A DNA stretch of 64,000 bases from Vitrella brassicaformis CCMP3155 (GCA_001179505.1 CDMY01000255.1:186001-250000); one strand, 5' to 3'; counted from the stretch's first letter, positions 14,881-47,698 are shown. The notes: generated by a model from the sequence alone, not told the origin. Made by a program: numbers and translations.

Positions 14881-15550
14881 AGCTCCGATGGCGATGCCAA
14901 TATAAAGTGCACGGTGGTGCAGGGGAAGTCGACGTCTGCGACCGTCGCAAAGCGATGCGGCTCTCGTGGTGGCTGTTGGTTGGTCCTGGAATATCGGATA
15001 TTTGTTCTCTATTTTTTTTTGTCTCCTCGAGTCTCGTCCGTTTACATCATGAGGTGTTCTCTATTTCCGGCTACGAATGGATGGGGAGGTCATGGATGGG
15101 TCTCTACACGAACGGGGGTGCTTGGAAAGCTACAAATTTGACGTGACCACCTCACTGTACACACAACAGCATTCTCGCGAAACAACAGAGGATCTACCTG
15201 TGCAAGCCTCGCCTGAGCTGTAGACAGGACCTCACACGCACCCTCAAACGCACCCTCCAATGGATATGCACGGCACACATCTGTCTACACACAGAAGAGC
15301 TACGTGGGTCTCTCGTTTGATGACCTTCAGTAAGTCAGCAAGCAATATCTTTGCAAGCCTCGCATCAGTCAGTCAGCTGTACAGAGAGGCAGTGATATGT
15401 ATACCCACACATCACATGAACACCACCCACGGATATATACAGGCTAGACCACATTAAGCTATACACACACGCACAATGCAAGTCCCTGTACACACGTATG
15501 TATAGATAGCTACACAGCTGTACCCACACAATTTCTGACTCGACAGCTAG

Positions 15551-18500
15551 CTACGTCGGCGCCCCTCTGCCCAATGAGGTCCTTGCCTTCTGCAGCCACA
15601 GCCTCATCAGACGTCTGGACGGCGCTGACAAGGCAACATCCACACCCTCAAATGGCCGTGGAGTCTGCCACTCGTCCACATCCCCCACCTGCGCACATCA
15701 ACACACCCCGCAGCTAACCGATGTCCGTGCACACCGACCGACGGCTGCCCTTTTTCTCCCGCCCACCTGTGCCTCCTCCATGTGTTCGCTCGAAGCCGCT
15801 GCCTCCTCTGCTGGTTTGCCCTCGCCCTCCTCTGCTTCCGACGCCTCCTCCCCTCCGCCCCGCGCGGTTGTTCTGGCGGCCTGCAGCCACGCCCGCATGA
15901 TTGTCGCTGCGTGGGGGGGCACAGTGACGTCAGGGAAGGGGGCTGTGTCCTGGGCGGGCCGTGCCGAGGGCAGTGCGAGACGAATGGGCGTATACGGCTG
16001 ACCCACCCCTCTCTCGAGAGGGATGTTCTGATGGATGGAGAGAGAGAGAAAAGGAAGTGCTGATCTCCATGTTTATGTCTCGGCCTTGTGCGTGTGGCTG
16101 TCACCCTGTTGCGGGAGTGGTACGTCTGGTAGCATGTGGCGCAGAGCACGGCGGTGGGTGTGAAGGTCTTGTAGTAGTGCAGCCACAGTGTCTCGTTCCA
16201 CAGTGGCGAGAGGTCGCGGGTTTGCCTGAACTGCGATGCCATGGCCATGGCTGAGTAGATGGGGTAGGTGTCGATGGCTTGGGGGTTGCCGCATAGCTCA
16301 CACTGACGCTGATTCGCCAAAGCCAGCGCTGAGTTGGGCTTCACCACACGCAACTGCAAATGGCCAACCACACATATGAAGGCGTTCGTTCAATGGCCGG
16401 CAAGCTTGTGATGGTTTGGGATAGGGTGGTACCTGTCTTTGCAGGTGTAGCAGGAATTTGGCCCTCTGTCGCCACATGCGTGTGATGTCGGCGCACACCT
16501 GCGGGACGTGCATGACGCGACCCGTCTCCTTCCGACGACGCAGCAACTCAGCCATCTGCCACACCCACACAGGCAGCGGAGATGAGCGTTATTCGCTGCG
16601 GTTGGTGACGTGATGTTTTTGTGCCTGCATACCTGTTCATCTGGCGGCACATTGAAGCCGAACAAGGCCCCTTCGGCAGGAGCTGTCGTCACCGACCTGA
16701 AACACACACAGACACAGACAAGCTCAGCCCCTGCCTGCACTCATCGAGCCCATGGCTGCGTACTCGTCTTCTCTGGGCGATATGGCCAGTGAGGCCTGCG
16801 TGTCTCGTTGCTCCTCGGGCGACACAGCTCCCAAGGCCTGCAGCTGCCGAGGGTCGAGTGTGCCCATGAGGGTGGCCAGGGCCTTGAGCAGAGGAGTGCG
16901 ATAGCGCTCCATCGTCTGTCGGCTGCCCAGAACCACCTCACGGAAGTTCTGCTGGAGCCATATCGCACTGCACACAACACAAGGACAAGGAGCTAACAGC
17001 GTGCGAGCTTCTGAGGGCATCTCGTCCGTGCGTGCATGCTCCTTACTTTTCTTTGACGAATTCTTGTTTGTATCTGGCGAGTCCGTATGGGTCACGGGCC
17101 TCCTCAGGCTCCACCCAACCCTCCATGATGCCGCCACCTGACAGACACGCACACACGAAGGCACGGTGGACATGCTGTACGCTTCGTGTGTGCCGTCGTT
17201 TGAACCAACCAGGTGGCGCTCTGAGGATGGGTTTGGCCTTGATTTCCTTCCACTCCTCCAGCAGGCTCTTCTCCTCACCCTCCCGCACCCTCTTGGCCAC
17301 ATCCACCGAGGGCACTTTCCACACGCGCAGGTAGTTGGCCGTCCACACGGAACACGTCTTGATGAAGCCGCACACCAGCCACACGACAGGGAACACGACG
17401 GAGAATGCCGGGTCGTCAAACATGTTCCAGTTCTCCGAGAAGAGCACCTGCATCCCCAGCAGCCACGTGAAGGTGCCAGCGGCCAGCAGCGAGACCATAA
17501 AGTAGTACTGCTCGGAGAAGCACAGCAGGTCCAGCGACCGCACCGACGGCGGCACGCCCTCGTCCACCGACTTGCCCTCGCCCTTCCACCGGTCAGCACG
17601 CGTGTCGAATCGGAATTTGCAGTATCGGAGGTAGTCCATGATGCGCCACCTGTGGAACAGCTCCATGATGTTGAGGCAGAGAATGTCGAAGAGGATGTGA
17701 AAGAAGAAGATGATAACGAAGAAGGTCATGTAGTAGGGGGCAGTGGCGGGAGTGATGTCGAACTGCAGCAGGATGTCGGTCTCGTCGTAGAAGAACCAGC
17801 ACAGCCCCAGCACCACCGGGATCCACAACGCTGCCAGCAGATCAGTCGAGTAGCTCGCCATGCAACCTGAATGGAAGACGACGACAGACAGGATGCCCAT
17901 GATGACTGCATCGCCTGTCTTCTGGGTCACTTTACCGATCATGTCGCTTGGTATCGGGTCGCGGACCGGGCGGCTGCAGCCATGTATGCAGTCACAGACA
18001 CAGATGCGCTTGAGCTCACACACGCCCCCCCTGTTTGTTCCCTTACTTTCTGGCCTCTTGTTTGAACTTCTCGTCCAATGTGTCCAGGTCTTCATCCTCG
18101 TACTCAGATGCGCCCTCCTCCGGCACAAAACGCCTTCAGGTATACAGACAACAAATGACACCAGAATTGGGGATTACATTTGCGAGTGAGCAGCTGCCGT
18201 TGTCTGTCTGTTGCCTTACTGTCTCTCCCACGGTTTGGCCCCCCTGGCCAGCCACTGTAGCATTCGCCACGCCTTCCTGCCCCTGTGCTCGATGGTGTAC
18301 AGGATGTACTCCTGGCTGGGACTCACGTAAATGCGGTCAAACGTCTGATAGGAGGCGCGAGGAGGAACACACCTCCATCGTGACGTCGGTCGGTCCGTGG
18401 CTGAGGTGTGTCGAGTCGATCTACCTGTATGAGGAGTTGTATGAGGAAGCACATGAGGAAGGAGAAGAGGTCAGGGGCGGCCAGAATCGCTAGAGTGTTG

Positions 18501-21500
18501 GTCTGACACACACAGGAGAAAGCAGCACTCGAATGCATCGATCCGCCGGTCGGTGCGTTATCAAGCCCACCAGAATGGCGATAACATTAATTGGCACCAC
18601 GAGCAGCATCTCCTTCATGAACTGATGCACCACCAAACTCATCGCGACCTTCAGTAGATACAACCCGACCTGCTCACACACAAACACACACGCACACACA
18701 AGGCGATAAGGGCTGGCCACATCTGTCAGGGTGTGGATGACTCACTGACCAGCATGTAGAATATGTTGTCCCTGAAGATCTCCGAGGCGGCGAACTCGAG
18801 CACCGACAGCGCCACGAAACTGTGCAGGAGGAGGCAGAGCGCGAGAGCGCTCCTCTTCCATATGCGCATGGTGAAGACGGTCATGAGGTCGAGCTCGTCC
18901 GCCTCCTGCTTCATCAGCTTGGCCAGCCGGTGAGCGTCGCTCTCGAGTCGCTTCTCGAAGTCAGATATCGCCGGACGAATGAAGATGCGCATGCCCAGGA
19001 AGATCAGGTACACGCCCACCACCATCAGGCCCATGCCCAAGCGACCATACTGACGCACTGCAGACATACAACAACATCGACAGTGCAGTGCTACATACAC
19101 ATACAGTGCCCCGTGAACGCCCGTACTTCTGAAGTCTGTCCGTGTGAGTTCGGTCTCAGCGTTGTAGGAGCTGACAAATGAGTCGAAGAGCCCCAAAGGG
19201 CACTCCGGGGTGATCTCCTGCCGGCAGGCGCTGTACGTCTTGCAGTCGGCGTCCTCCTCCTTGCAGTTGAACCAGATGAAGAACGGCAGCGCAAGGCCAC
19301 CCACGGCCCCCGTGCAGAGGGCCACCACTATCAGCAACCCAACTGTGAAGGGCAGGAGGGCCAGGAGGCTGCCGCGGACGACGGGGGGCAGGTAGAACTG
19401 GGGATAGAACGACTTGTACAGCGCCGGCGGGTGCCTGCACACACACACACACACACAGATCCACCCCATGCACTCGTCCATCGTGTGCCTCCTGTTTGTG
19501 GTCGCATACTTGAGTTTGGTGAAGAGTCTGTGCATGATCCAGAGTACGAACAGCATGGCTACGCTGAAGAGGCCGACGAAGAAGAAGAGCGAGATGTAGT
19601 ACTGGAACTGGAAGGCAAAGCTGACGAGCACGTCCGTGTGGTCCATCGGGATCAGAGAGAACACCAACTCATACTCCACGGCAACCTGATCAGACCCAAG
19701 AAACCATCAGCATCACATACCATACCTACACGAACACTAACGGAATCCCACCTGTCCCCGTTGTTGGGCCTTGTCGAGGGTCTGCAGCTTCTGGTACTTC
19801 ACCTCCGCCCGTATGATCTCCTTGTTGCGGTCATTCTCCTGCCAGTAGTAGACGTCCAGCACCACACGGCCAGGCAGACTATCCTCCGATGCCGGCTCAA
19901 CAAGCTTCACCTGAACCCACCAGAACAGAAGGCGGCAATCCACTGCTGTTCTAGGCAGGTCTGTGCTCGGACTTACCGGCACCAGGGGCACTGTCCTGGT
20001 CTTTCCTGAGTCGAGGTCCTTCCTCTTCATGGGGTATCGTGTGATGTAGAAGAGCTCTGCCCCCTCGTTGACCTCAAACCAGCGCGGCAGCACCTGTTTG
20101 TCGTTGAAGACCTCGTCATACAGACATCGTAGCCGCACGTTGCGGCACTGGTCCGCCACTGCCGTGGACAGGTAGGCCAGTCGCTTGATGGGCTTTGTGG
20201 TGCCGAGAGGGACGAGCTGGCACTCTCGGCTCTGCTCAGCCAGCGCCCACAGGGGGATGGTGTGGCCGAAGCCCTCACAGTTGGAGAAGTACGGCAGGTA
20301 CGACAGCCAGATGGCGCTCGTGCCGTCCTGCCAGTAGTCGTCCTTGTTCTGGAACCTGTTGACGCCCAACTCACTCGCCTGCTGCTGATATATGTCGGCC
20401 TCGAAATCCCTGAAGGTAATGACAGCGAAGGAGAAGACCAGTGGATGGATGAGAATTGCTTCTTGTGCAGCTACGCTCGTCACCTTGGCATGAAGCTGAG
20501 GAAGGCCCGCGTGGCGACATACGGACTCGACGCACTCAGGTTCTTGACAGGGCTGTATCCACATAGACAGTCACACATCCACGTAAGCGATCATTGTCTC
20601 TCATGCGCCTACATGTTGTAGGGTACTTCCAGCTGCATGTCACGATTGACCTCCATGAGGAACATGTCGCTCGTACCCAGCCTCGCCCGGTCTGGTTGGG
20701 TGGTCTCGATGACGGCCGACTGCAGGAGGAGGAACTTGTCGGGCAGAAACAGCCCATTGAGGATGTCGATGTCGACTCGGTACTGCACGGTGCGGAGGAA
20801 GTGCAGGTGCAGCTCCAGAATGCCCTTGAGCGTGCCAGCGGGAGCCTCCGTGATGGACGGGGGAAGCTGCGGCAACAAAATACACACATGCCTCGGTCGA
20901 TGAATCACTGCATTCATCTCTCTGTATCCATCTGCCCACTGACCTCTATTCGTGTTGCTTCATTGGGCGTCTGGGTGAGCTCCAGCGTCCTGTTGACCGA
21001 GATACTGATGCGCCAGTCTGCACCGTACTCTATTGCGGGGCTCAGGTGACGCAGGTCGAATGTTATTAACGCAGACGAGCCGGCATGTCCCTGGTAGATC
21101 GTCACCTGCACACACACATGGCCTCACATTCTCCCACATAAGGTACGTATGTGTGTGGGTGGCTGGCTTGCCATTTCGTCCTGGTCGTCGCCCCACGTGA
21201 AGTTCATGATGCTCGGTGTGGAGAGGTTATGGTTAACGGGGTTGAGAGACTCAATGACCACCTCGCCCTCGTTGAGAAACTGGACGGTCGACCGCTTGCT
21301 GCACTGATCCAGACGGGTCGCACCAGATATCGCCGTTAAGGTACCCAACGGACACCTGCAAAACAACCATGCGCATCGAATACATCTGTGCGTGTGCGAT
21401 CGTAGGTGTGCGCTGGCCGACCGTGTCCACCCTGCGGTGCCCGCGGCCTCCCTCTCTCCGATGGTCCGTTTGAGTTCTTTGATGACCCACTCGGCCTTGG

Positions 21501-24500
21501 TCTGTCGCGTCACGCGCAGCAGCTTGGCCAGCGCTGACGTGTCGTCAAAGAGAAGCGTCAAGTCGCTCAGCGTCGAGTCATACGGGGTCGCCACGGGACA
21601 GTAGAAGCCAAACGGACATCGCTCTCGAGTCCTTATGGAAGAAACAATGGGAGCCAAGTGAAAGGGTGTGTAAACGACAGGGCAGCGACGACAGTGTCTA
21701 ACCTGAAGGATTCTGATGTCTTGTTCCGGCAGAAGAAGCCCTCTGGGCATAGGTTGCGGTACATGGCCTCCATGGTCGTCGACGGACCGCAGTAGAACCC
21801 AGACACACACTCCCTGTCCGTCTGAAAGATGGAAACCCAGGACGCATCACATACCCAGACAGGCATGACTGACACATTCGTAGCCCCCCTTTCTGATCTT
21901 GCGCCGTGTCCCTACCTGTGACTCCGGCGTGGTGGCTTCGCCGCAGACATATCCCTCGGGGCAGGCCTCCGAGAAGGTGAGATTCCCCGTCAGAGATGGG
22001 CACACTCTGCCAGAGGGGCACGGGTCACAGGCGGTGTCATCCACCGTCCCCCGCCATGGCGCCCAGCTCCCCTTCTCACACGCACGACATGACACGTCGG
22101 ACGTCCCGCCGCGGCGCCACTTGCCTACACATGAATCAGTCAAGCGTCGTGTGTATTGGGGTATCGATCCACCCACTGTCTGGCCTGCGTTGTCTTACCG
22201 GGTTCACAGATGTAAGGCGTGGTTGTTCCGAAGTCGGGACACGAGAAGCCAGGTGGGCAGTCGAGACACTCGAAACTGCCCTCACTGGGCGAGTACTCAC
22301 CCGGGAAGCATGTGGTGCCCCGTAGCCGACCCTCTTCGTCCACGATGGTCCCCGTGCCGGCCGGAATGGGCACTGCCGTCCCCGGCGGGCATATCGTGCC
22401 CACGGGACACAGGTCTGTGCCACCAGATGAGTTGGCGCGCGGCTGACAGAATGTGCCAGTCATGCATTGGTGAGGGGCCTTGAGGGACAGCGGGTCGGTG
22501 AAGTCGATGAACAGGGGCTCGTCTCCGTCTGTCGTGTTGAGCTGCAGACGGCGGACAGGAACGGAGGGAGCGAGGCCCTCGCGGTCGAAAGCAGAGAATG
22601 GCACTCGGTAGTAGTAGGGCATGCGGAGGCCTGAAGAAGCCATGCTTGTCAGAAACGACAGCCACCCGGTGTGCACTTGGGGGTCGAGGCTGCGGCTGCT
22701 GTCGAACGGATTCTCAAGACGCTGGAATATCGACGCGATCCGTGACGCAAGAGAAGATGAAGCGCCTTGATTGTCCGCTGGCTCGTCACGCTGGACAAGC
22801 CGCCTCCCTGCCACAGGGCTGGGGGCGAGAGCGAACCCCCAGAGACTGAAATCCGTCGCCACGACCCCTCCCACGCCACTGGTTGTAAGATTGACGTAGT
22901 TCTGCAACATCAACTCAGCATTGGGCACCAGGAAGATCGGCACAGGCTGCTTCGTGATCCCCTCCATGGGCAGCTCTCGCAGTCGCCTCGCCGCACCCCC
23001 ACCTGACCCCGTGGTCTCGTTGAAGGGTAGGTCGACCTCCCTCGTCGAGTAGAAGTAGAGGCACGTGCCAGCGTCGCAGTACATGGCCTCGCGACATGGC
23101 TGTGGGCGCGTCCAGAAGGTCAGCGAGTCGACGAGGTAGAGCAGGCGGGATCGCACCTCGGGTATGTGTACGTGGTAGTCGAGTCGCCATGACTCGTCAT
23201 CTGTGTTGATCATCTCGAGGCCGTCCATCCCAGGGGATTCCATGCGGGACAGCCGGTACGCGAGCCGCTGCAGGCTCAGGCCGTGAAGAGTAGTGTACGG
23301 ATCCTTCAGATACGTCCCCGCCTCCTCGTCTAGAAGGCGCTGAACCTTCGCCCTGTTCCAACAGCATGCTCCCGTGAAGAGGTCCTTCCACGACGTGCCC
23401 GCGGGCCTCGGAATCCGCCAAATGGCGCTCAGCCTGTCCACGAGATCGGTGCGGGAGAAGGGGACGTAGTACATGTCGATGGACGAGTCACAGACAGCAG
23501 CTATCACAATGGGATCGCCCAGCTCCAACTGATCGATGGATGCACATACAGAAAACACGTATGAGTGCAGAGGTGCTTAAACACCGGGCCGTCTTTCATC
23601 GCTTACGCGTGTGATGTTATCGACGGACAGCGGGATCGGAACACACAGCGATGGCTCGTGCTTGGATGCAGTGCCGACCCCGCACCTCAACCCAGAGGGA
23701 CATAGCTTGGATGGCGCCTTGGTGCCCCTCTCTTCACAGAGATAGCCACACGGACACGGTAGCGGCTTGAGCATCCTCTCATGCGGACAGATGCCACCCT
23801 CAAAGCACTCGGTGCAGTTCCACTGCCCGGACTTGGCGCTGAACGTCCCGGCAGGGCATGACCGAGGCTCCAGGTTACCGGGTGTGGGGCCGCACATGTA
23901 GCGACTGCTACATGGGATGCCGGGGTGTCGAGGGGTGGGGCAGTAGAAGCCCAACGGACAGCCGCCCACGCCCTGTGGCTTGAACGAACCCGCCGGGCAG
24001 AAGAAGCCCTGGAAGCACGGCTGAGGAGTTGAGTAGTTGCCCGGCCGCGACACCCCCGAGACGGCCCCAGGCCAGCAGTGCAGACCGGTGGGGCAGCGGA
24101 GCGGCCTGCGCCCGTCCTTGAAGCGTGTGACAACAGCGTCGGCCGTGGCGGTTCCCTCCAGGCAGTAGTTGCCTCCCGGGCAGGGCTTGTAGGGCACTGT
24201 CAGGCCCCACTCGTCACACACCCAGCCTGCCTCGCATGGGAACGGGTGGGCCATTCGTGTGTGAGGGCAGACGTGGCCGGGGGGGCATGGGCGACACTGC
24301 TGCTGCCCCTCCAGTGGCTGGTATGTGCCTGATGGGCATGGGATGGCGTCAGTGTTGCCTTGGCCCTCGCAGTGGTGGCCTGGTGGGCAGCGGGTGATGG
24401 GGCCGACACCCCTAGGGCAGTAGTGGCCGCCGGGACACGTGGCGAGGAGCTTGATATGCACGTAAGAGTCCGACCAGTCCACCCCGTTGAGCGTCACTCG

Positions 24501-36500: not shown

Positions 36501-39500
36501 GCCCTCTCTTGGCACCACAGATGTCCACCCCGTAGCCAGATCAGCAGGCACGACGGGCAAGAACTTCGGCGACACGCTGAGGACCTCAATCTGAGACGGC
36601 ACGAACGTCAAACGGTGGTCTGCGCCGAAGGCCAGCCACTGCTCGGTCACCCCAGCGCGCAGCTGCACCGTCAGCTCGTCGCCAGCAACCACCTGGTCGG
36701 CGGTGTCTCCCGGGGTGTTTGGGGCGCGGGCATGCACTTCCAGCGATGCAGGAAGGGGACACGCCAACTCGCTGCCGTTGGCATGGAGGTGCTGGCAGGG
36801 CATGTCCCTCGTGAAGCCCTCAAGAAAGCCCTTGTCAATGACCTCAACGCTCCGAGACAACCGGACAGCGTAGCTGGTGGATGGGTCGAAGCCGCCAATG
36901 AGACGGATGGACGCGGACTGTCCTGCGACGACGAGGGACGGCCTGATGGCATGGACAGACGGCGGGCGATGATACTCAAGGAACACCGACGGTGTGTTCG
37001 GCAGCCATGATGCCCCGCCGTCCGGTGAGAGTGTTATCGGGACCTGGAAGGACCAGATGGCGGGTGGGCGGGGAGGGGGCAGGGGGGCCGTGGCCGACAT
37101 GGTAGTGCTGTTCAGCACTACTGTGTTCTGCAGCAGCTCGGTACCAGCCTAGAGCACACACCACACACCACACCCACATGCACATGTCATAAATTAAGAG
37201 TGAGCTCTGGTTGCTTATGGCATACCCGGATGCGCAGGTCGTGTATTCGAGAGAAGTCGACACCTTTGATGATCAGTCTCGTCGCTTGCCCCGGCAGCAC
37301 AGCTGCAGGCTCAACCGAAGTGATGACGGGCACCACTACAAGTGGCAGGGTAGCGGAAGGACGTGCAGGGGACTGCAAACAGTTGGTCGACACCCGGACG
37401 TCGACTGCGGCTGAGGCGTCCTCAATGGGGGGCACCACGCATGAGGCCATGAACGGGGAAACCCACCGAAGGCGGGATGTCGAGAGATTCACCGGCCCCG
37501 CTGTCCGGTGCTGCTGGATCTGGCAGCACGCCTCCTCGTGGTTGACAAATCGTGTTCCAGTCAGCGTTAGCGTCACGCTCATGCTCTGAGGGATCGCTCT
37601 TGGCTCCACTCCAGTGACGACAGGGACGGTCGTGAGAGCAAACACACTCGAAGGAGAGCTGAGGGTGAGGACAGTGTCGCCTCTCGTCACGACGAGGTCC
37701 ACAGTCAGCTGCACAGCCGGATAGCTATCAGATGTGATGCTGGCCTCCAGTTGGGATCGCAGCGACCATAGTTTTGTCACCGCATCGGCACACTCAAATG
37801 CATCACCGTCCGCATCCAGCGAGACATCGGTGAAGGCGACGTCGGCGACCGGCCCGTCATGCACCCCATCCGCCACGCCTGTTCGAGATCGGCACCGCAC
37901 CTCTCTCAGCCCGCCATTTGCCGCGGCGAACCGCCACGCCTCAGCCAGCTTGCCATCACCGACCTCTCCCGGGACCACCACCGGATCATTCTGGACGCAT
38001 AGACGAATGTCGGTCGACGGACAGCTGTCGGGGCAGTACTCGTCATCCAACACAACCAATCGGGGCGACACCGCAGTCAGCATCACAAACGGCAAAGTGA
38101 GCAGGTCCATCGACACGAGAGCGGGCCCTCGGGAGAGGTAAGGGCTGTAAACACGGAGCTGCGGCAGTCCCTTCGACGGGAATGAGGGCGGCATCGGGGG
38201 GCTCACGCACAGCAGAGACGACGTGTTGACGACCAGGCCCTCCACTGCCCTCTCCACATACTCGCAGGTCCCCGATGGGCTGTCGAGCGACGGAAACAGG
38301 GCCGTCCAACTGGGCGGGAAGCAGCCAAGACTGGGCAACGTGTACACACACCCATAGCTGGCTCCAGGGTTCAGACCCGACGCGCCAATGAAGACGGGAC
38401 ATGGGAAGTTCTCGGCGCACAGAGGCCGTGGGGCTGAGGCAGCTGGGATGATGGCTGGTGGTTCGAGCACTTGGACATCATGATATGTGTCGATCCATTG
38501 TCCGCTGAGTTGAAGGTAGAGGGATGAAGGGCCGACCGGCAGTGCTGCCGCACTTGACCACAGGCATCCTATCGCCGAAGAGCCAGGCGCGACGGAGTTT
38601 GAGTGCACCACAGCGGGCATGGCGGTGGCGGGGAGGGGGATGACCTCTCCGACAGGACCACTCGTTCCCACCCTGCACCCGCCCAGGTTGCTGCCGAGCT
38701 CCATGGCACCGATCGTCTGCCAGTTCTGCAGGTACACCACCACTCGCACCGACCCAGTCGTCCGGTGCACGACCGAAGGCACCACGCTCTCGATCAGAGG
38801 CACCTCATAGACTCGCACAGTTGCACCAGCGGGCAGTGGGCTGTGGACGAAGGCTGCCGTTACCTCCTCTGCGGGCGTGCTGGGGTCATACTCGTCACCA
38901 CAGGTGAGGAAGAGCTCCATCGGGCCTGACACAAGGCCGCTGGTGACTGGGCAAGACACCACATCAGTCCCTGACGTCAGTGCTGATGCCGTTGACAGGG
39001 ATGCAGTGTCATCTGGCATGGGTGACGCAGCCGTCGTGCCGAGGCCCCCGAAGTGACATCGGCAGGTCAGTCGGTGGACGGGGAAGAGGCCGTCCTTCAC
39101 CGCCAGCTGCATGTCCGGTCCCGGTGCCGACAGGCCGGCGAAGAGCACATAGGGGGACACAGACGCCAGCCGTCCAGGTCGGTAGAGATCCACGGACCCC
39201 ACCACATCTGCGTCGCTGTGCACGGTCCGGCCTCTGTTGGTGCTGCATGGCGTGCTTCCAGAGCAGAGCACAAAGGTGAGTCTGGCCCCGTCGAGTAGCC
39301 TCTCCGCATCAATTTGCTGGATCTGTGGAGGGATGGCAGTGCACCGAACGGCAGTCTCATTGACCCACATCGCCCGAGTGGGCAGGGATGGCGGGAGCGA
39401 GTCGGCGATCACCTCGGCGGTCTTGGAGAGGGACGTGCTGTCGAGCAGCCACCAGCATTGGTGCTGGAATCGAGGGGAGAAGCGACCGCCGCGCACCCAC

Positions 39501-42500
39501 ACGTGCGATGACGAGTACATCGGGATCACTGCGGGCTTGATCGAGAAGGGCCCGGTGGACGCTTCTTCGACGTTGAATGTGAAGGTCCCGAGTGCGATGC
39601 CGAATCGCCTGACCCATTCGTCACAGCTGTCGCCCCCTGCCTCTGTCGGTGGACACGCAAGCGGCATCACCATCAAGCTGACGTCCAAGTCGCCTTCATC
39701 AGGCGGCACCGTGCCGCCAGGCCACACGCATCCCAGCACCGTCTCAAAGTCAGCCACACAAGGCAGCCACTCGGGCGCGGAGGCGCCTGACGGAGCGTAC
39801 GTCGGCCGCTGCACTGCTCCGGTCGTCGTGTGCTGGAATCGACTCCACACAGTCACATTGCTCGTGAAACAACACCCGCGGAAATGAAAGTCCAATCGTT
39901 TGGCCGCCCCATTAGTTGTCTGCAGCTGCACCAGCGACTGAAGGGGGGCGTCAATGAAGATCGGATCAATCGCCTGGAGTATGGCTCGTGTGGGGATCCA
40001 TGGGACAAGCGCCGCTGCGTCAGGCTGGACCGACAGCGCCAGCTGGAAGGTCCCCCGCCGTGCTGCAGAGATGTCGCACCGGCCGTGGGTCGAGTTGAGT
40101 CGATTAGCGAGGGTGATTGAGCCAGGCACCGGGGGCTCGCCTCCATTGGGATCGACAGTGTCGCTGAGTATCCACCCGCAGTGCAGGGGATCTCCCCTCA
40201 GCCAGGGAGTCGACTGTGCGAAGGTGTCGGCAAGATGGAAGACGACCTCAGCGCTGCTGCCGTCGGCGAGGATGACCGGCGGCAGCCACTCCTCCACCTG
40301 CGGGTCGTCGTACAGCCACAGGCTGAGTCCCGTGCTGATGGTCTCGTAGCCGTCTTCGTGGAAGGTGAGCGAGAGAGGGATGGCCTGGAGTAAAAGACAG
40401 ACACATCGTCCAATCAACTTCCACTCTTCTCTCTCTCTTTCTATTTTACCTACCTGGTTGGTGGGCATCGGCCCCGCCGCAGTCGTGTAAATGACGTCGG
40501 ACTCTTTCAGGTTGCACACCACCTCCTCAGCCGATATCATTGTGGCGCCCACCTTCACCGTCATGCCACCCGCATCCAGCAGACACGCCGCGTACACCAC
40601 ACCCACAGGCATGCCTTCACCTGCCACAATGGCTGAATAGCCACCACGCCGTGAGCCGCTGGCAGGGCTGATGGACGTGACGGAGGGCTGCTGGCGCACC
40701 CAAAGCGGCAGCAGACCAGACGACGAGAGGTTCGGGAGCGGCCCATGGATGAGCTCGATCGGTGCCGTCGGCTGTGAGGTGGAGGGGAGAGCGAGGTCCG
40801 TCGCAAAGTCGCCTGCAGCAGCAGGTGAGGCCAGGCCGAGGTAGAGACGTGCCGGCGTGCCGCTCTCGATGCTGCCCAGAGGAAGGACCGACCGCGGTGG
40901 AAAGGGGCAGAGGACCGCCACTTGGCTTAACACCAACGATCTCGCACGGTAGGCCACACCAGATGCCACCGATGGGGTGTCGAACCACACGCACACGGGG
41001 TCTGACTCAGCCCCGATGGGGAGATTGGCGGCATCGACAAACACCGGTGCAACGCTGCCGTCATCCTCTTGTGCGGAAGTGGGTAGGAAGCGCCATGAAG
41101 GCAGCAGCCTCAGTAGAAGAGTCCCGTCTGCTTTCTCGCGGTAGGCGACCTCAACACCATCAGACGTCAGCCGTCGCCGCACCGGACGAGGGGACTCGGT
41201 GACGAGGTCTTCCACAAACAGCACGTCCCCCCACAAGCCCCGAGAGATGCGCTTCTTGGACAGCGGCGGCAGCGCACAGGTGAAGTTCAGCAGGTGTGAA
41301 GGCCCCACAGGCGACACCTGAGCCGGATACACGTCAATCTTGGCGCCAATAAGGCGGCAGATGGGCGACAATGGCTGCTCGCGAATGTTTGCAACGGACA
41401 CCTCGACTGTGAACCCGCTGTGGCTCCCTGCTGCTGGCATGAGAGACGTCACTTGCGGGGCATCGCCGTATATGAACGCCGTTGCTTCCACGGACTCAAT
41501 GAGGTTCGCGAACACCCTCAGGGGGGTCGAGAAGGGCGTGGCTGTCGCTGTATCAAGAGCAGGGCAGGTGCAGTGGATCTCTGAAGTCGCCACGTACTCC
41601 CCAGCCACAAAATGCGTCCCAAACTGGCAGCCGAGGTGGGGCGCGTAGGTGAATCCGCTTCCCGTGATGCGCACCTCCCAACCACCAGCAGAGCTGCACC
41701 AGTTGGGCTCCACTGCCTGGACGACGGGGCGGCTGACGAGCGTCATGGATGCCTTATTCGATGACAGCCACTGCCGTCCATTGTGAGACACCTGGGGCTG
41801 AAAGGAGTCGCCAACTGCTCCGAGAGTCGTTCCCGACGCCGGGTAGCAAAGAACTGCCGTCCACGAGACCCACAGCGCCACACCCGGCACATCGGCACCA
41901 AAGCGGCATTGGAGTGTCGTCAGGTTGAGGAAGGGGCCGCCGTGGATGGTGACGGGTAGGTTGGTGTCGTAGATAAGATGAGAAGGCGACACACCTGTTA
42001 CACGCGCGTTGAGAGGCGGCAATGTGACCATAAGCGGGGGGTTTGTGAAGACCTCTCCTCTGCCGTCCAGGCTCATATCGACCGTGACAGTGGCCGCCAC
42101 CCCCTCGAACACGCGCCATCCGTTGTCGCTGAGAAGGGGCAACGCCAACAGAGAGCTGTCCGCCGCCACCACAAACGAACACAGGACCTCACCCTGGGAG
42201 ACGACGGTGATGTTGCTGCTAGTCAGCCTCGGCAAGGCATCGGCAAGATAGCCGTCAGGGAGTGACGACAAGAAAACGTCTCCTGGGCGCCAGCTGTCGC
42301 TCATTGGACTCAGGCGACACGTGAACCCCTGGCTGCCGCTCACGGGGGTCGATGCATTGCCGGGCTCCACAGCCACAAGCACGGCCAGAAGGAGAGTGTC
42401 GTCGGGCAGGATCTCGTACTGATGGACACTCAGACCGGTCGCTCGCGGAACATCGACAATGGTGACATCGAATGGGGTGGGGTGAGACTGCTGGCCGTCG

Positions 42501-45500
42501 ATGGACAGGCTTAGAGGAAGAGCCGTGGCAGCGGTGGCGGTGGGCGGGGTGCTGCACATGAGGGTGGTCGTGTTGACGAACAGGGCGGGAAGCCGCCACT
42601 TGCCATCGAACGCGCAAGCCGTGTACGGGGAGGGTGCGAATGACAGACCCGTGAGCATGACGGTCGTCTCAGATGCCGCCTGCACGAGCAACAAGCAAGC
42701 AAAGAAGCAAACAATTTGCAATGAATCGACGACGCCATTCTTTCGTTTGTTCACCGCAATGTTGCGAGGGCGAACTTCAGTCACAACCGGGACGTCGACA
42801 TAGTGGAACCTCAGTCTCACATCCTCGCGCCATGTCCACCCTCCGTCTTCAGACAGCCACACGAAAGCCTCTGTAACGTCGCTGCCCAGCGCAGCCGCAG
42901 CAGGTGCGTCGCATCGCCACATTGTGTCATTCAGACGAACGATCGCCGTCACGTACACATCTGCCTCGGGACCCTCTCTCTCTGCAAGAGGCGGCACGGT
43001 GCGGTCGGTTGCAGTGAAAGCACATCGGAGAGCATCCCCAAGCGAAGCGAGGCCTCTCCCCTCCCACATCAGAATTCGTGTGCCGCCTGTCTTCGGTCCA
43101 TAATGTGGCGAATAGGCCACTTCACCGGTCGGCCGTGAGATCCCGAGGGCACCGGCGTGGTAGCCAGCTGAGGGCCACACAACGGGAACGGCCCTCCACA
43201 CATCAGTCGTCATAAAGGTGGCATTGCTGACGGTCTCGTCGAATGCGTGGGTGGGATCGTCGCAGGTGACTCCAGCATGGAATCGGTGCCCTCCCTCCCC
43301 GCCACTGGCGATGGGCACTCCAGTGGTCATGTCGCCGAATGAGCATGTGATGGACGTCAGCCCGCCTGCCGGTGTCCTCTCTTCCGACGAAGTGCCCATT
43401 GTCACAATTCCACCCACATTCGTGACGTCTCCACGCTGCATCAGCGACTGCGCATTCGGGACGTCGGCACTGACCAGCACGCACAGAGGAGACACACAGG
43501 TCAGTTCATCGCTCGCTGGTGGGTCCAGGACGAAGGTGGTGCTGTATGACGACCGGTAAGACGCCGCACTGGGCCCATCAGCCCTCATAAGACGCCCCCC
43601 TGCCGGCAGAGCTGGAACAACCGTCGCTGGCTCAAGTAGTACATCGAGCTTCAGTGCATTGCTGGCGGGATGGGGCGGGTCGTCGGAATAGACTTCCACA
43701 TCCCACTGGGACGGCCGGGTGGTCGACAGCACGACGGACGGCAGCTCACACACGAGAGTGTGGTAGTGCACCGACAGGGCTAGAACAGAGGCGCTGGTGG
43801 CCGCCGTAGTGGTGAGAGTGAACTTGCAGCGCCATGGTACCGACAGAGGAAACGCCGCACCAGAGACCTCTATGCGCGCCGGGACCGAAGTTGCGGCAGC
43901 TGCACGGATGGTTCGGGGCTTCAAGGCCACGATGTAAGCCGCCATCCCCCCTCCCGTCCCCCCAAGTCCGCCCAGCCACCGCACCGAATGTTCAAACGTG
44001 TCAGAAACGACAGTTGTCGTCGCAGTTTGAGGCCCCACTCCTCTGAGCACCGTCCCTGGCTGGCCGGCCGACCATGCGAGCAGGACTGGCAGACGCGCGG
44101 AAGATTTGAGAGCGGCCGACGCTTGGCCCGTCCGCCATGCGATGGGGATGGGGCAGCGGACGGTCGTGTCGCTCTCGACGGTTGCGTGCTGCCACTCCGG
44201 TGCTGGGTCGGTCCACGCGAAGCCGATGATGCACCACGCGGCTGCCCCAATGGTGGTGGGGAAGTTCTGGCCGGTGATGGCGATGTGACTCGTTCCTTCA
44301 CCGATAGCAGGAGGCGACACACCGTCAGCGAGAGGCCGCGGCAGCACCGTCTGCTGGGGACCCACAGGCGCCGTCACGTCAGTAGTGGCCACGTGGGTCG
44401 CGATGACGAGTGACGCAGGCGAGAGGACCACCCGCAGATCACCGGTGTGTGTCCATGCGGGCGGCAGCCGCTGCAGGCACCGATAAGTGCCATCGCCCTG
44501 CAGCCATGCCAGCGATGGGGCCGGCTGGGATGATGGGATGGCCGTCGGATCATCGTGTGCGGGCGATGACTGATTGTTTGCGAGCAGCCAGCAGATGGAG
44601 GGGTTGGTGAGGCCCGTCGCCGTGACCGGGATGGGGATGTTGGTGGCCTCCAGCAGCGGTATGGCCAGGGGGGCTGACGTCACTTGCCGCGTGGCAGAGG
44701 CCACAGACACATCCAGAGAACTGTCGGGGTGGGTCAGACCGCCATCGAAGGACACCGTCACCTCCCAATAAGATGAATCTGAATCGTATAATTAATGCAC
44801 ACACATAAGCACATTCACATGCTCTACACGAGGACCCCTATGAGACGTGTGCCCACCTGTGAGCGTGTCGGTCCATGTTGGCACTGTGCACGCGATCCTT
44901 GTCGCACCCTGCCTCCGGGCTACCACGTTGTGTGTCGATGCCGCGCCAGGCATCGACCGAAACCGACACATGACCGTCGTGTACGAGTCGTCATGGGCGT
45001 CTCCCCCCTTGCCCATCGACGGCAGAGAAGTCACCATCACATCTGGCGAAACGAAGAACGACAAAGACCAGAATCGTACCCACGTGGATCACTGTGCATG
45101 CCGTCTGTATACACCTTACCGATTGTGTCTCCGCCGGCTGCAGCCACGGTCAGAGGCGTCACAGCGATGTTGCGGGCTGAGGGAAGCCCTTGACGGTGAG
45201 GCGAAGACAATGACGCCACAGAGGGGACCCTAAACAGGACACCGCACACACACGGATGCATGCGTGTGACAATCTACACGTGGTGTCACGTCGTACCAGA
45301 CGTCGGGTTTGAGCATTGCGACCAGTACACACACGGGGGAGCGAGGCGGACACTGACCCCCGGCGACCAAAACCTGACACAAACACACAGTCGACGCAGC
45401 GAATCCATGTACTCCCGGTGCCGTGCTCTATCTATGTCGACACCTCTGCATCTCCCGTGCGCGGGTCGACAATGGCCATGGCGGGCGATTCCACATACAT

Positions 45501-47563
45501 CTGCGATGCGGTCCCTGTCAGGGGCTCAAAACATGACGAAGCCGGCGGGGGGCACGACAGCCTCGTGGCGTTGACCACACTGCCCACGGTCCAGCACTCC
45601 TCTCGATGGCTCCACCGGCACTGGAGTGTAGCGGCACGTGGCGGAGTATCGGCTGCAGAAACCAGACCACGAATCTGCATTTGATGCCCTTTTGCCTGGT
45701 GGTTGTCTCGTCAGCTACCCACCTTGGTATATGGCCATGATGTCGCCGATCTTGTCGAATCCCTCCCCCACCAGTGCGATGGGATAGCTATGTACAGGCA
45801 CCCACCCACCCCCACTGCCGCCCTCCTCCATTATCAACACCGAGGGCCGCAGCTCCGACACTGTCAGGTCGCCTCCCAATATCAACACACGCGACCTCTC
45901 CGGGCTGCCCCAGGCACTGCTCCAGTGCTGCCCGCCGTCCAGAGACACCGATACCTCATGCAGACCGCCGTACGAAGAGCTCGATAGCGTGACACTCGTG
46001 TCGCCTTCAACTTCGCACAGGACCTCCACAGTTGCAGCTGTCAGACCCTGTGAGCGATCAAGTGTCGACAGGCCGCCGGCAACAACTAGTTCTGTCCCCA
46101 CCCGACACTTGACATTCCTTGCTGCCCGAGCCAGTGACATGGCCGGCCCCTCAGCGCCGACCCAAGGGAATAGCTCGCCCACTGTCTCCTTCACCTTCAC
46201 TCGCAGAACGGCCGCCCCGCCCCTCTGTGTCCGCCGAGCCAGATGCGCAAAGGAGGGCGGCATAATGAGCCACCGTGGGTCAACGTGAGTCGTCCTGGGC
46301 GGAGAGTCGACCACCGGCAGCTTCCTTGGCGCCATGACAAAGGGCCCTGCCTCAGCGAGAGCCACACCCACATCATGCTGCCCAACCGGGAGAGTGGTGG
46401 GTGTGCGGCATAGCACTGCAGAGTCGTTGGCGTAGGTGGGCGTGACGGCGCCATGGCCCTCGAACCAGCAAAAGGATGAAGCAGGGATGGGAAACGCGCC
46501 CGTGACGGTCAGCAGTGAGGATGTGGACACGTAGAGGAGCGATGGGCGGAAGGAGTGGACCACCACGGGTGTGTGAGCTAGCAGCGGAAGGAAGGATGTG
46601 CGATGGGTGGCGATGAGGTTGCTGGCGGGACCCGTCGAGAAGGCCGCCAGGGACACGTACACCGTGCAGAAGGATGGATGGGAACCAGACAAACAACGGG
46701 GCAGCTGAACAGATACACACGGACGGAGGGATGAGGCTGCTAAACGGATGTTTCCTCCCCCCTCATATCCCGCGTACCGGCGGCACGAGGCACCGAAAGA
46801 CGACACTCGTCACTGCGGTTGCGGTCGCGCTGCGATAGCTGCCCACACGATTTCCCTCGAACTCGCAGCTGACATCCAGACCAAGCAGCGGGAGGCCATT
46901 ATCCACCTTCATATGCACCGTAGCTCCGCCCACCCACGGCACCACCCTCGGCGACACTGCCACCAGGCGAGGCAGAGAGGCCAGTCCAGCCGTCCCCTGG
47001 TCGGTCTGCGCCACATCCACAGTGACAGACTGACCCACCGCGGCCAACAGACGATCAGCATCGACACCGCTGTCATCAGTCGCCGCGTACTCGATGAGGA
47101 TGACATCATAGCCCTCATATGTGTGGCATCTCGTGTAAGTGAGTGTGGCGAGGGCGGCCGACGCACTCGTGAATGGGCCGAAGACCGTCGTCGTGCCGTT
47201 GAGTGCCGTGTCGATAGAGAGGCCAGCCACTGGAGTGACAGTCACATCGCCGTGGAAGGCCCGAACACGGGCGGCCAGATGAGTGGTCCCGCTGCCCTCT
47301 ATGCCCACATTCGTCACCTCTGTGACGCGACAAGAGGACGAAAGCGCCCCGGGGATGCTCAGACACGTCCAGAGAGTGGCACATGCAACCACCAGGATGA
47401 AAGATACATGGCGCCTGCTGCTTGTCGTACATGATGAATCGGATCCACCAGCTACTTCATCAGTGCACACTCCTCTCGTGGTTGCCTCACACGGACATAG
47501 TCTCGCAGAAGCAGGGCAGGCGGGATCAGTTGCATCATCTGCTTCATCTGCTTCGTGCTTCAT
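15551..47563 (-). CDS. Giant multi-pass membrane protein (est. 9,000-9,700 aa): signal segment, about 60 IPT/TIG-like domains, GCC2/GCC3-type Cys repeats, about 10-12 TM helices, cytoplasmic tail
   Basis: Consecutive minus-strand ORFs (266, 363, 2524, 2693, 648, 400, 871, 472 aa and smaller) are joined by canonical GT-AG introns. I checked 44779-44840, 37149-37225, 28966-29040 and 25986-26062. No intervening promoter, terminator or second signal peptide is seen. The last exon reads LMRLWLQKARTSLGRGAPT*, stop at 15551-15553. Confidence 0.8.
21300..24450 (-). other. Cysteine-rich CPxG(Y/F/H)xC repeats (GCC2/GCC3, ephrin-receptor-like) of the giant protein, interrupted by a Cys-poor linker
   Basis: CPGGHYCP, CPPGHHCE, CPSGTYQP, CPPGHVCP, CPGGNYCL, CFQGFFCP, CPLGFYCP, CPAGTFS, CPPGFSCP, CPEGYVCG, CPEGFFCR and CPFGFYCP. 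Confidence 0.85.
24450..47300 (-). other. Tandem IPT/TIG-like Ig-fold array of the giant protein
   Basis: A recurrent unit of about 90-130 aa: (T/S)-S-V-x-P-x-x-G-x-x-x-G-G-T-x-V-x-V-x-G...C-x-F...C-x-(T/S)-P...V-S-x-(N/D)-G, for example TAIEPREGPADGGTVVTVYG, ARVTPPFGTMEGGTVVQVEG and TSISPASGSRRGGYSAIVAG. I counted about 60 units by eye. Confidence 0.8.
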
Positions 47564-47698
47564 CTATCCATCGTGATGCTGGGATGGTTGTTGCACGTCA
47601 GAGATCTGCACCTCCCTCCTGCGCGCCATCTTGCGAGCTTTTTCATCCTCCAAGCTTCCATTCATCACTTTGGCGTAAGGAGAGAAGAAGGTGACGAG
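47564..47698. promoter_or_regulatory. Putative bidirectional promoter (135 bp between the start codons of the giant gene and BBS4)
   Basis: Divergent ATGs at 47563 (-) and 47699 (+). No specific motif identified. Confidence 0.55.

What the first reader, a model, noticed from the sequence alone, without database searches (positions are those of the whole stretch)
15551..47563. A roughly 9,500-aa receptor-like giant: about 60 Ig-like IPT domains, Cys-repeat stalk and multi-pass membrane module in one ORF
Seen: a 32-kb gene with one N-terminal hydrophobic segment (HVSFILVVACATLWTCLSIPGALSS, residues about 52-75), a very long IPT array, Cys repeats, many TM helices and a tail. Established: long tandem-Ig ectodomains on multi-pass proteins (polycystin-1), IPT arrays (fibrocystin, plexins) and Cys-repeat multi-pass proteins (apicomplexan CRMPs) act as surface sensors or adhesins. 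I do not recognise this combination at this scale. Inference: a tether on the order of 200 nm if extended, coupled to a membrane signalling or channel unit. It is a candidate mechanosensor, flagellar hair or adhesion system.
Basis: partly seen in the sequence, partly recalled or inferred. Interest (0 to 1): 0.9.

Follow-up and report, generated by a model that had tools for sequence, protein, structure and literature searches.

The report
Giant IPT-array multi-pass surface protein
A real, expressed 40-exon gene of a marine alveolate alga encodes a 9,696-residue membrane protein (about 60 Ig-like domains, a cysteine-rich stalk, an 11-helix membrane module unlike any solved structure, and a zinc-finger-like tail), and it is the largest seen member of a widespread protist family that nobody has characterised.

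Summary
The gene runs on the minus strand exactly from 47563 (ATG) to 15551 (stop), but it is not one ORF. My model has 40 exons and 39 short GT-AG introns (60-103 nt). Of these, 17 are confirmed by a spliced transcript contig, one more by RNA contigs of public runs.

The model protein is 9,696 aa:
- one N-terminal hydrophobic segment;
- 53 significant plus 8 marginal IPT/TIG domains;
- two Ephrin-receptor-like Cys blocks;
- a conserved pre-membrane domain;
- 11 predicted TM helices (N-terminus out, C-terminus in);
- a 423-aa tail with a conserved 4-Cys domain.

Orthologues with the same collinear C-terminal ~2,300 aa exist in oomycetes (up to 7,926 aa), dinoflagellates, Syndiniales, Perkinsus, a jakobid and green algae. 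All are annotated as hypothetical.

The gene lies head-to-head with BBS4, 135 nt between start codons. The same scan noted a paralogue elsewhere in this genome.

Most likely it is a giant adhesion or contact-sensing receptor. Its function is untested.

The parts
15551..47563 (-). Whole coding span of the gene. The model has 40 exons, 39 GT-AG introns and a 29,088-nt CDS plus stop, giving 9,696 aa.
   Evidence: Exon-chain model. The last 863 aa are identical to the transcript-derived protein P0001.
15040..15550 (-). 3' UTR of about 511 nt.
   Evidence: Transcript contig L002 aligns down to 15040. RNA contigs run about 475 nt beyond 15500.
47339..47413 (-). N-terminal hydrophobic segment (aa 51-75), a signal peptide or signal anchor.
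   Evidence: Translation and hydropathy. A weak candidate intron (47492-47415) would bring it closer to the N-terminus; this is unresolved.
24483..46972 (-). IPT/TIG array, aa 198-7370. It holds 53 significant plus 8 marginal Ig-like repeats, each with a conserved Cys pair.
   Evidence: Pfam PF01833 and TIG_plexin. Self-HMM. Divergence of the repeats.
23643..24440 (-). Cys-rich block 1 (aa 7385-7650), made of CPxGxxC / Ephrin_rec_like (GCC2_GCC3) repeats.
   Evidence: Pfam PF07699. Cys density. It lies in the same exons (13-14) as TIG repeats, so the array and the stalk are one reading frame.
22545..23615 (-). Cys-poor insert domain (aa 7660-7990). It is present in the alveolate relatives and absent from the oomycete ones.
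   Evidence: (collinearity). No Pfam or Atlas match.
21331..22517 (-). Cys-rich block 2 (aa 8000-8290), Ephrin_rec_like repeats.
   Evidence: Pfam PF07699. Conserved in all long homologues.
19590..21330 (-). Pre-membrane extracellular domain (aa 8291-8727). It is conserved across the family from about aa 8520.
   Evidence: No Pfam hit. Transcript support from 20327 downward.
17352..19589 (-). Module of 11 TM helices (aa 8728-9273), N-terminus outside and C-terminus inside.
   Evidence: Hydropathy. AlphaFold2 models with pLDDT 85.9 and 85.8. 554 representative relatives. No Pfam hit and no clear PDB match.
17496..17672 (-). Most conserved stretch of the family: the basic loop between TM9 and TM10 (aa 9167-9225). 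Family consensus: ELFHGWKxYDYLxYxRYRF..RWKG..LDQMCFSSQxYF.
   Evidence: Alignments A1 and A2. Predicted cytosolic by the positive-inside rule (inference).
15554..17351 (-). Cytosolic tail (aa 9274-9696, 423 aa).
   Evidence: All its introns are confirmed by RNA.
16004..16501 (-). Conserved 4-Cys (CxxC...CxxC, invariant Trp) tail domain, aa 9459-9572. Probably zinc-binding.
   Evidence: four invariant Cys and one invariant Trp in 23 sequences. No Pfam or PDB relative.
47564..47698 (.). 135-nt divergent intergenic region shared with BBS4, whose ATG is at 47699 on the + strand.
   Evidence: sequence. BBS4, E=1e-46 to PDB 6xt9_D. TPR repeats in the next exon. That it works as a shared promoter is inference.

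Best explanation
One expressed gene encodes a 9,696-aa integral membrane glycoprotein of the cell surface.

Shown:
- It is a single minus-strand gene of 40 exons.
- The domain order is: N-terminal signal/anchor; about 60 divergent IPT/TIG Ig-like domains; two Ephrin-receptor-like Cys-knot blocks; a conserved juxtamembrane domain; an 11-helix membrane module; and a tail with a conserved 4-Cys domain.
- It belongs to an ancient, widespread and uncharacterised protist family. In that family the C-terminal ~2,300 aa is conserved, and the N-terminal IPT array varies from a few hundred residues to over 7,000.

Inferred:
- The IPT array projects as a filament of roughly 200-250 nm from the plasma membrane, possibly the flagellar or periciliary membrane, on a rigid disulphide-rich stalk.
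- Binding of, or pulling by, an external partner (substrate, another cell, matrix) is passed through the juxtamembrane domain to the 11-TM module.
- The module's strongly conserved basic cytosolic loop and zinc-finger-like tail then engage cytosolic partners, or the module itself conducts ions or lipids.
- In short, it is a giant adhesion or contact-sensing receptor. It is analogous in design to polycystin-1, ADGRV1 and CRMPs, but built on a different membrane module.
For: Gene structure:
- Canonical introns.
- 17 introns are reproduced exactly by JGI transcript contig L002. One more (20943-20867) is supported by spliced RNA contigs of public runs X9 and X20, and the same runs show most of the 17.
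- The last 863 aa are identical to P0001.
- TIG and Cys repeats share exons 13-14.

One gene rather than several:
- A single homologous protein (P0155) aligns collinearly with aa 6025-9657 at 38% identity.
- All long homologues carry TIG array, Cys blocks, pre-TM domain, TM module and tail in the same order.

Domains.

Ectodomain character: 45 N-glycosylation sequons and a conserved Cys pair in each IPT repeat.

Topology:
- 11 helices, from hydropathy and two confident AlphaFold2 models.
- The conserved Arg/Lys-rich loop and a 4-Cys domain lie on the C-terminal side.

Family breadth: 554 representatives at E<=1e-3, from alveolates, stramenopiles, a jakobid and green algae.
Against: - There is no localisation, ligand or phenotype for any member. 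The function is inferred from architecture alone.
- The 5' 26 kb of the model rests on reading frame, splice signals and homology, not on RNA. Exons 3-5 and the junctions 22198/22125 and 21127/21041 have weak splice scores.
- The N-terminal hydrophobic segment sits 50 aa from the start, so its cleavage as a signal peptide is uncertain.
- The membrane module gave no significant match to any receptor, channel or transporter of known function. How, or whether, it signals is therefore unknown.
- RNA depth falls about four-fold upstream of 20300. This could be 3' bias or a shorter internal transcript.
Confidence: 0.5

Rival explanations
1. Tether-gated channel or scramblase. On this reading the 11-TM module is a very distant member of the TMEM16/OSCA(TMEM63)/TMC superfamily. 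Force on the IPT filament would open it. That would make a one-polypeptide analogue of the tip link plus TMC, possibly in the ciliary membrane.
For: - In an exhaustive VIA-align pass over 48,161 PDB representatives, five subfamilies of this one superfamily recur for both models. They give the longest alignments of any membrane protein.
- The module has the same helix count and N-out/C-in topology as OSCA/TMEM63 (my own knowledge of OSCA topology).
- BBS4 lies next door.
Against: - The scores did not rise when the complete module was used.
- Foldseek TM-scores to TMC2 are only 0.18.
- There is no sequence or profile signal to the Anoctamin, RSN1_7TM or TMC families. Pfam gave nothing shared on 69 modules. 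PDB profile searches gave nothing.
Confidence: 0.12
2. CRMP-like trigger of regulated exocytosis. The protein would sense contact and license discharge of extrusomes or rhoptry-like organelles, as Toxoplasma CRMPa/b do for rhoptries.
For: - The design principle is the same: Ephrin-receptor-like/EGF-like Cys repeats, a multi-pass module and a long cytosolic tail. CRMP tails are 478-565 aa (PMC9815656); the tail here is 423 aa.
- The host is an alveolate, and the nearest relatives are dinoflagellates, Syndiniales and Perkinsus.
- CRMPs are reported as conserved in alveolates and have Dictyostelium look-alikes.
Against: - The CRMP core has an EGF-like domain directly before TM1 and 9 TM helices. 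Here a 440-aa Cys-poor domain precedes 11 helices.
- The family's invariant loop words (FHGW, HGWK, RWKG, QMCF, MCFS) are absent from all CRMP sequences in that paper's supplements. These include four Chromera CRMPs.
- The TgCRMP TM cores show other motifs.
- Chromerids therefore carry bona fide CRMPs separately.
- The family also occurs in oomycetes and green algae, which lack rhoptry-type organelles.
Confidence: 0.13
3. Passive structural element. The protein would be an anchored surface fibre (cell coat, flagellar hair, scale or cyst-wall tether), with the membrane module serving only as an anchor.
For: - The IPT array is extremely long and its length varies between species from about 200 to over 7,000 aa before the Cys stalk.
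- It carries many glycosylation sequons.
- Giant anchored fibres with a channel-like C-terminal anchor are known on algal flagella (my own knowledge of Chlamydomonas mastigonemes; not tested here).
Against: - A plain anchor needs one helix. Here the most conserved parts of the whole protein are the 11-TM module, its cytosolic loop and the 4-Cys tail domain, with near-invariant residues across supergroups.
- This pattern points to a conserved activity on the cytosolic side.
Confidence: 0.15
4. Gene-model artefact. The span would hold two or more genes, or a decaying pseudogene, rather than one 9,696-aa product.
For: - RNA could be laid only on 15500-21499.
- Depth drops upstream of 20300.
- Some 5' splice sites score weakly.
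- No public full-length protein for this locus turned up in the representative search.
Against: - There is no in-frame stop in 29 kb of spliced CDS.
- Two exons of 4.3 and 5.9 kb are intact.
- TIG and Cys repeats sit in one exon.
- Homologues from transcriptomes and genomes carry the same full architecture in one protein.
- The only 'split' seen, P0001 starting mid-exon, is caused by Ns in the transcript contig.
Confidence: 0.05

Closest known systems
Unnamed protist family of 'IPT/TIG domain-containing / hypothetical' proteins. Examples: Albugo laibachii F0WN37 (7,926 aa), Aphanomyces invadans XP_008870714 (7,478 aa), a Gymnodinium smaydae transcript (6,256 aa), Perkinsus chesapeaki FOL47_003034 (5,112 aa), Amoebophrya CAD7942610 (3,700 aa), Andalucia godoyi ANDGO_00679 (3,140 aa).
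   Same: - The core is collinear: Cys block 1, Cys block 2, pre-TM domain, 11-TM module and, in many, the 4-Cys tail domain.
- A TIG array lies in front.
- The conserved loop motifs are shared.
   Different: - Identity in the core is only 27-35%.
- This copy has the longest ectodomain seen: 7,360 aa before the stalk, against 5,792 aa at most elsewhere.
- It has an insert domain (aa 7660-7990) shared only with the alveolate relatives.
- No member has a known function.
Apicomplexan/ciliate CRMPs (cysteine repeat modular proteins; TgCRMPa/b, PfCRMP1-4)
   Same: - Ephrin-receptor-like/EGF-like Cys repeats.
- A multi-pass C-terminal module.
- A long cytosolic tail.
- An alveolate host.
- A presumed contact-sensing role.
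   Different: - 9 TM helices against 11.
- In CRMPs an EGF-like domain abuts TM1.
- The TM motifs differ, and the family's signature words are absent from CRMP sequences.
- CRMPs have no IPT array.
Polycystin-1 (PKD1) and adhesion GPCR ADGRV1
   Same: - A giant ectodomain of repeated beta-sandwich domains on a multi-pass membrane unit.
- PKD1 also has 11 TM helices, N-out and C-in (my own knowledge).
- Both have ciliary or periciliary roles.
   Different: - No PKD, REJ, GAIN/GPS, PLAT, Calx-beta or 7TM_2 signal.
- No fold match to either membrane domain beyond a 95-residue fragment.
Fibrocystin (PKHD1) and plexins
   Same: Arrays of IPT/TIG domains (PF01833; TIG_plexin hits). Fibrocystin is ciliary.
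   Different: Both are single-pass. No G8/PbH1, Sema or PSI domains were found here.
TMEM16 / OSCA-TMEM63 / TMC superfamily
   Same: - 10-11 TM helices.
- OSCA-like N-out/C-in topology.
- Recurrent weak structural matches.
   Different: - No sequence or profile similarity.
- No cytosolic RRM-like domain in the loop that would correspond to the OSCA cytosolic domain.

Membership tests
Uncharacterised protist family: IPT array, Cys stalk, 11-TM module | Homologous 11-TM module with the conserved TM9-TM10 loop (ELFHGWK...RWKG...CFSSQ) | tested here: met
   - phmmer of exon 33 found 554 representatives, 354 of them at E<=1e-10.
- The window's own loop reads ELFHRWR...RWKG...CFSEQ.
- Alignments A1 and A2.
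Uncharacterised protist family: IPT array, Cys stalk, 11-TM module | Collinear Cys block 1, Cys block 2, pre-TM domain and TM module, preceded by a TIG array | tested here: met
   (about 40 long homologues). (Pfam on the Aphanomyces, Gymnodinium and Andalucia proteins).
Uncharacterised protist family: IPT array, Cys stalk, 11-TM module | 4-Cys tail domain | tested here: met
   C42, C45, C95, C98 and W81 are invariant in 23 sequences, including the window's.
CRMP (cysteine repeat modular proteins) | Ephrin-receptor-like/EGF-like Cys repeats in the ectodomain | tested here: met
   PF07699 hits. CRMP domain list in PMC9815656.
CRMP (cysteine repeat modular proteins) | Conserved core: EGF-like domains directly followed by a 9-TM module | tested here: not met
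   A 440-aa Cys-poor domain precedes TM1, and 11 helices are predicted. The CRMP core is described and its sequences are.
CRMP (cysteine repeat modular proteins) | Sequence homology of the membrane module | tested here: inconclusive
   The signature words of this family are absent from all CRMP sequences in the paper's supplements. The AFDB cluster search returned no CRMP. I could not run a direct alignment or profile comparison.
TMEM16 / OSCA / TMC superfamily | Shared 10-TM core fold | tested here: inconclusive
TMEM16 / OSCA / TMC superfamily | Sequence or profile match to Anoctamin, RSN1_7TM or TMC | tested here: not met
   Pfam on 69 modules at E<=10 listed none of these among the 25 of 53 families shown. 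Profiles A1 and A2 against PDB sequences gave nothing.
Polycystin-1 family | PKD repeats, REJ, GAIN/GPS, PLAT and a TRP-like channel domain | tested here: not met
   No such Pfam hits. No fold match.
Fibrocystin / PKHD1 | IPT array with G8 and PbH1 domains on a single TM helix | tested here: not met
   The IPT array is present. No G8 or PbH1 was found, and there are 11 TM helices.
Meckelin / TMEM67 | Match to Pfam PF09773 | tested here: not met
   Only 1 of 69 family modules matched, at E=5e-4, and I did not identify which member. It was not the first member of the alignment, the homologue P0004. The window's C-terminal 863 aa (P0001) gave no Pfam hit when scanned alone. Meckelin did not appear in the PDB profile searches or among the listed fold matches.

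The most novel reading that the evidence does not exclude
The 11-TM module is a previously unrecognised, deeply divergent branch of the TMEM16/OSCA/TMC superfamily. The protein would then be a self-contained, tether-gated mechanosensory channel (or scramblase) of the flagellar or periciliary membrane, co-regulated with the BBSome. That would make it a single-chain protist counterpart of the tip link plus TMC apparatus, conserved across eukaryotic supergroups.
Probability: 0.1. Interest if true: 0.9.

Novelty: new variant of a known kind. Interest (0 to 1): 0.6.

Why it matters
- Giant-ectodomain multi-pass receptors (polycystin-1, ADGRV1, CRMPs) are central to ciliary sensing, hearing and parasite invasion. 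Each is built on a different membrane module.
- This is a further module with confident predicted models but no clear fold match in the PDB, no Pfam entry and no published member that I could find. Yet it is conserved from jakobids to green algae, oomycetes and alveolates, including crop and fish pathogens and coral symbionts.
- The conserved cytosolic loop and 4-Cys tail domain give precise targets for mutagenesis.
- The natural variation of the IPT array, from about 2 to about 60 domains, is a ready-made test of whether tether length matters.
- If the weak TMEM16/OSCA/TMC resemblance is real, it would bear on how mechanosensitive channels became coupled to extracellular tethers.

Tried and rejected
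- Single-ORF reading: rejected.
- First exon-chain model: it over-called in-frame introns inside the long exons, giving 64 exons. A stricter run missed in-frame introns that RNA proves. The final model forces the RNA-proven introns.
- Pfam on all C-terminal exons, on P0001 and on five homologues' modules: nothing beyond Ephrin_rec_like.
- Protein Atlas by features:
  - TM1-4 piece: nothing.
  - P0001: only family clusters, plus a 0.87 lead to an oomycete cluster partly labelled PF28488 SPCC553_12c, which the local Pfam copy could not test.
  - Insert domain: nothing.
- Atlas shape search: meaningless hits.
- Word-based homologue searches with alignment A1 and with P0001 region 270-470: only self and one fragment.
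- Foldseek against PDB and AFDB Swiss-Prot: nothing. The best were TAPT1 at TM 0.30 and TMC2 at 0.18.
- Synteny with BBS4 at the Amoebophrya orthologue: not conserved.
- Literature searches for the family (TIG with zoospore, Phytophthora, dinoflagellate or Vitrella; SPCC553.12c): nothing relevant.
- Tail 4-Cys domain against PDB and Pfam: only scattered weak zinc-finger hits.
- I did not align the CRMP sequences read from the paper. That would have meant pasting long sequences into a tool.

Full report
OBSERVATION

The window has no 32-kb ORF. On the minus strand, the span 47563-15551 is a chain of open stretches. The largest are 2,534 and 2,703 codons. Reading the breaks shows canonical short introns: 37225-37149 (GTATGC...CTCTAG, 77 nt) and 29040-28966 (GTAGGC...GTCAG, 75 nt).

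I built an exon-chain model from codon log-odds, splice-site weight matrices and an intron-length prior. The final model has 40 exons, 39 GT-AG introns (60-103 nt, median 75) and one stop, at 15551-15553. The product is 9,696 aa.

RNA EVIDENCE

- Public runs hold this DNA; marine sediment metagenomes are among the holders.
- Laying RNA-type contigs on 15500-21499 gave minus-strand spliced joints (CT..AC on the + strand) for 16 introns. RNA contigs of run X9 (one of 4,015 nt) cover the whole stretch, and that contig runs about 475 nt past 15500.
- A JGI transcript contig (L002, 4,041 nt) aligns from 20327 to 15040 with 17 introns, exactly as modelled.
- The protein called on that contig (P0001, 863 aa) is identical to the last 863 aa of my model. 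P0001 starts mid-exon because of a run of N in the contig, not because of a transcript start.
- In its favour: TIG and Ephrin-receptor-like repeats share exons 13-14, and one homologous protein (P0155) aligns collinearly with aa 6025-9657.
- Weak points are exons 3-5 and two junctions with poor acceptor scores.

ANATOMY

- aa 51-75: the single N-terminal hydrophobic segment.
- aa 198-7370: the IPT/TIG array.
  - Pfam PF01833 and TIG_plexin hit every large exon.
  - An HMM iterated on the protein itself finds 53 repeats at conditional E<0.01 and 8 marginal ones.
  - The repeats are old: mean pairwise identity is 21%, the maximum 39%, and neighbours are no closer than the rest. Tandem Repeats Finder finds nothing at DNA level.
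  - Each repeat keeps a Cys pair.
- aa 7385-7650 and 8000-8290: CPxGxxC repeats that hit Ephrin_rec_like PF07699, with 8-11 Cys per 100 aa.
- aa 7660-7990: a Cys-poor insert between the two blocks. It is shared only with the alveolate relatives.
- aa 8291-8727: the juxtamembrane domain, conserved in the whole family from about aa 8520.
- aa 8728-9273: the membrane module.
  - Hydropathy and two AlphaFold2 models agree on 11 TM helices. The models are the window's own TM3-TM11 (pLDDT 85.9, pTM 0.83) and the complete module of homologue P0004 (pLDDT 85.8, pTM 0.84).
  - With the ectodomain outside, this puts the C-terminus inside.
  - The most conserved stretch of the family, the Arg/Lys-rich TM9-TM10 loop, then lies on the cytosolic side. 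This last step is inference from the positive-inside rule.
- aa 9274-9696: the tail. It holds a roughly 110-aa domain with four invariant Cys (CxxC...CxxC) and an invariant Trp. The domain has no Pfam or PDB relative. It is probably a zinc-binding module, which fits a cytosolic location.

RELATIVES

- A full HMMER pass with exon 33 over 1.84 billion representatives gave 554 proteins at E<=1e-3. Lengths range up to 7,926 aa.
- Named members:
  - Albugo laibachii F0WN37
  - Aphanomyces invadans XP_008870714
  - Thraustotheca clavata
  - Cantina marsupialis
  - Gymnodinium smaydae
  - Symbiodiniaceae
  - Amoebophrya
  - Perkinsus chesapeaki
  - Andalucia godoyi
  - Mesostigma viride
  - by fold search, Micromonas
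- All are 'hypothetical' or 'IPT/TIG domain-containing'.
- The C-terminal ~2,300 aa is collinear in every long member. The part in front of the stalk ranges from about 200 to 5,800 aa. The window's 7,360 aa is the longest seen.
- Identity to the nearest relatives is only about 35%. Those relatives are myzozoan alveolates. This agrees with earlier notes of this scan that name the genome Vitrella brassicaformis. I did not verify that name independently.
- The scan also noted a paralogue elsewhere in this genome (s1-239600). It has not been followed up.

WHAT THE MEMBRANE MODULE IS NOT, AND MIGHT BE

- Pfam gives nothing on the window's module or on 69 family modules.
- Family profiles find nothing among PDB sequences.
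- Foldseek finds nothing in the PDB or AFDB Swiss-Prot. In the AFDB clusters it finds only uncharacterised family members.
- CRMPs are the obvious comparison. They are described as EGF-like domains directly followed by 9 TM helices, with tails of 478-565 aa (PMC9815656; PMC9670195).
  - Here a 440-aa Cys-poor domain precedes 11 helices.
  - The family's signature words are absent from every CRMP sequence in that paper's supplements, including four Chromera CRMPs.
  - The TgCRMP cores show other motifs.
  - I therefore do not file this protein as a CRMP. It shares the design, not the module.
- One of the 69 modules hit Pfam Meckelin at E=5e-4. I could not identify the member, and nothing else supports the link.

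CONTEXT

- The start codon lies 135 nt from the start codon of a divergent gene on the + strand. That gene is BBS4: E=1e-46 to PDB 6xt9_D, with TPR repeats in the next exon.
- The organism is therefore ciliated, and a shared promoter is possible.
- The arrangement is not conserved at the Amoebophrya orthologue.

MECHANISM

- Shown: one gene, one architecture, an ancient family, and strongest conservation in the membrane module, its cytosolic loop and the tail domain.
- Inferred: about 60 Ig-like domains of roughly 4 nm each give a filament of some 200-250 nm on a disulphide-rich stalk. Engagement or tension is relayed to the 11-TM module, which either signals through its cytosolic loop and zinc-finger-like tail or conducts ions or lipids.
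- My confidence splits in two. That this is a single-gene member of the family: about 0.85. That it is a surface adhesion or contact-sensing receptor: about 0.45-0.5.
- Rivals are a tether-gated TMEM16/OSCA/TMC-like channel (0.12), a CRMP-like exocytosis trigger (0.13), a passive anchored fibre (0.15) and a gene-model artefact (0.05).

NOVELTY

The combination is not unique to this genome, and its members sit in public databases. No member is characterised. The membrane module and the tail domain have no curated family in the library used and no clear match among solved structures. This copy is the largest seen. I rate it a new variant of a known kind (giant-ectodomain multi-pass receptors), with interest 0.6.

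Noticed in passing
window 47699-48605 (+): BBS4 (BBSome subunit) is encoded divergently, with its ATG 135 nt from the giant gene's ATG. The first exon matches PDB BBS4 at E=1e-46, and the next ORF is all TPR repeats.
   Followed up: yes
window 19435-19467, 18670-18700, 16697-16712 and other intron 3' ends: Many introns end in TG/GT-rich tracts (for example GTGTGTGTGTGTGCAG) rather than a polypyrimidine tract. These tracts were masked as repeats when reads were laid.
   Followed up: no
window 19976-19911, 19509-19435, 19126-19058, 17935-17867, 17209-17138, 40453-40385, 31273-31214: Introns whose length is a multiple of three and that have no in-frame stop. The first five are proven spliced by RNA; the last two are model-only. 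ORF-based reading runs straight through them and adds about 20-25 false residues each.
   Followed up: partly
window 4472-4771 and 52123-52422: Two runs of exactly 300 N (assembly gaps), both outside the gene.
   Followed up: no
family member P0013, aa 1910-2364: A metagenomic family member carries three tandem copies of the 4-Cys tail domain.
   Followed up: no
alignment A2 (69 family TM modules): One member hits Pfam Meckelin (TMEM67, a ciliary transition-zone protein) at E=5e-4. The member was not identified, and profile and fold searches do not reproduce the hit.
   Followed up: partly
AFDB cluster hit A0A7S3NIH4, aa 482-921: A transcriptome fragment named 'Ion transport domain-containing protein' contains this TM module. 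It is unknown whether an Ion_trans domain is truly fused to it.
   Followed up: no
window 15500-21499, RNA depth: Depth of RNA contigs in run X9 is about four times higher downstream of 20300 than upstream. The cause could be 3' bias or a shorter internal transcript.
   Followed up: no
L002 about 870-940 (transcript contig): The public transcript contig has a run of N inside exon 26. This split the gene call into two proteins (326 aa and 863 aa).
   Followed up: yes
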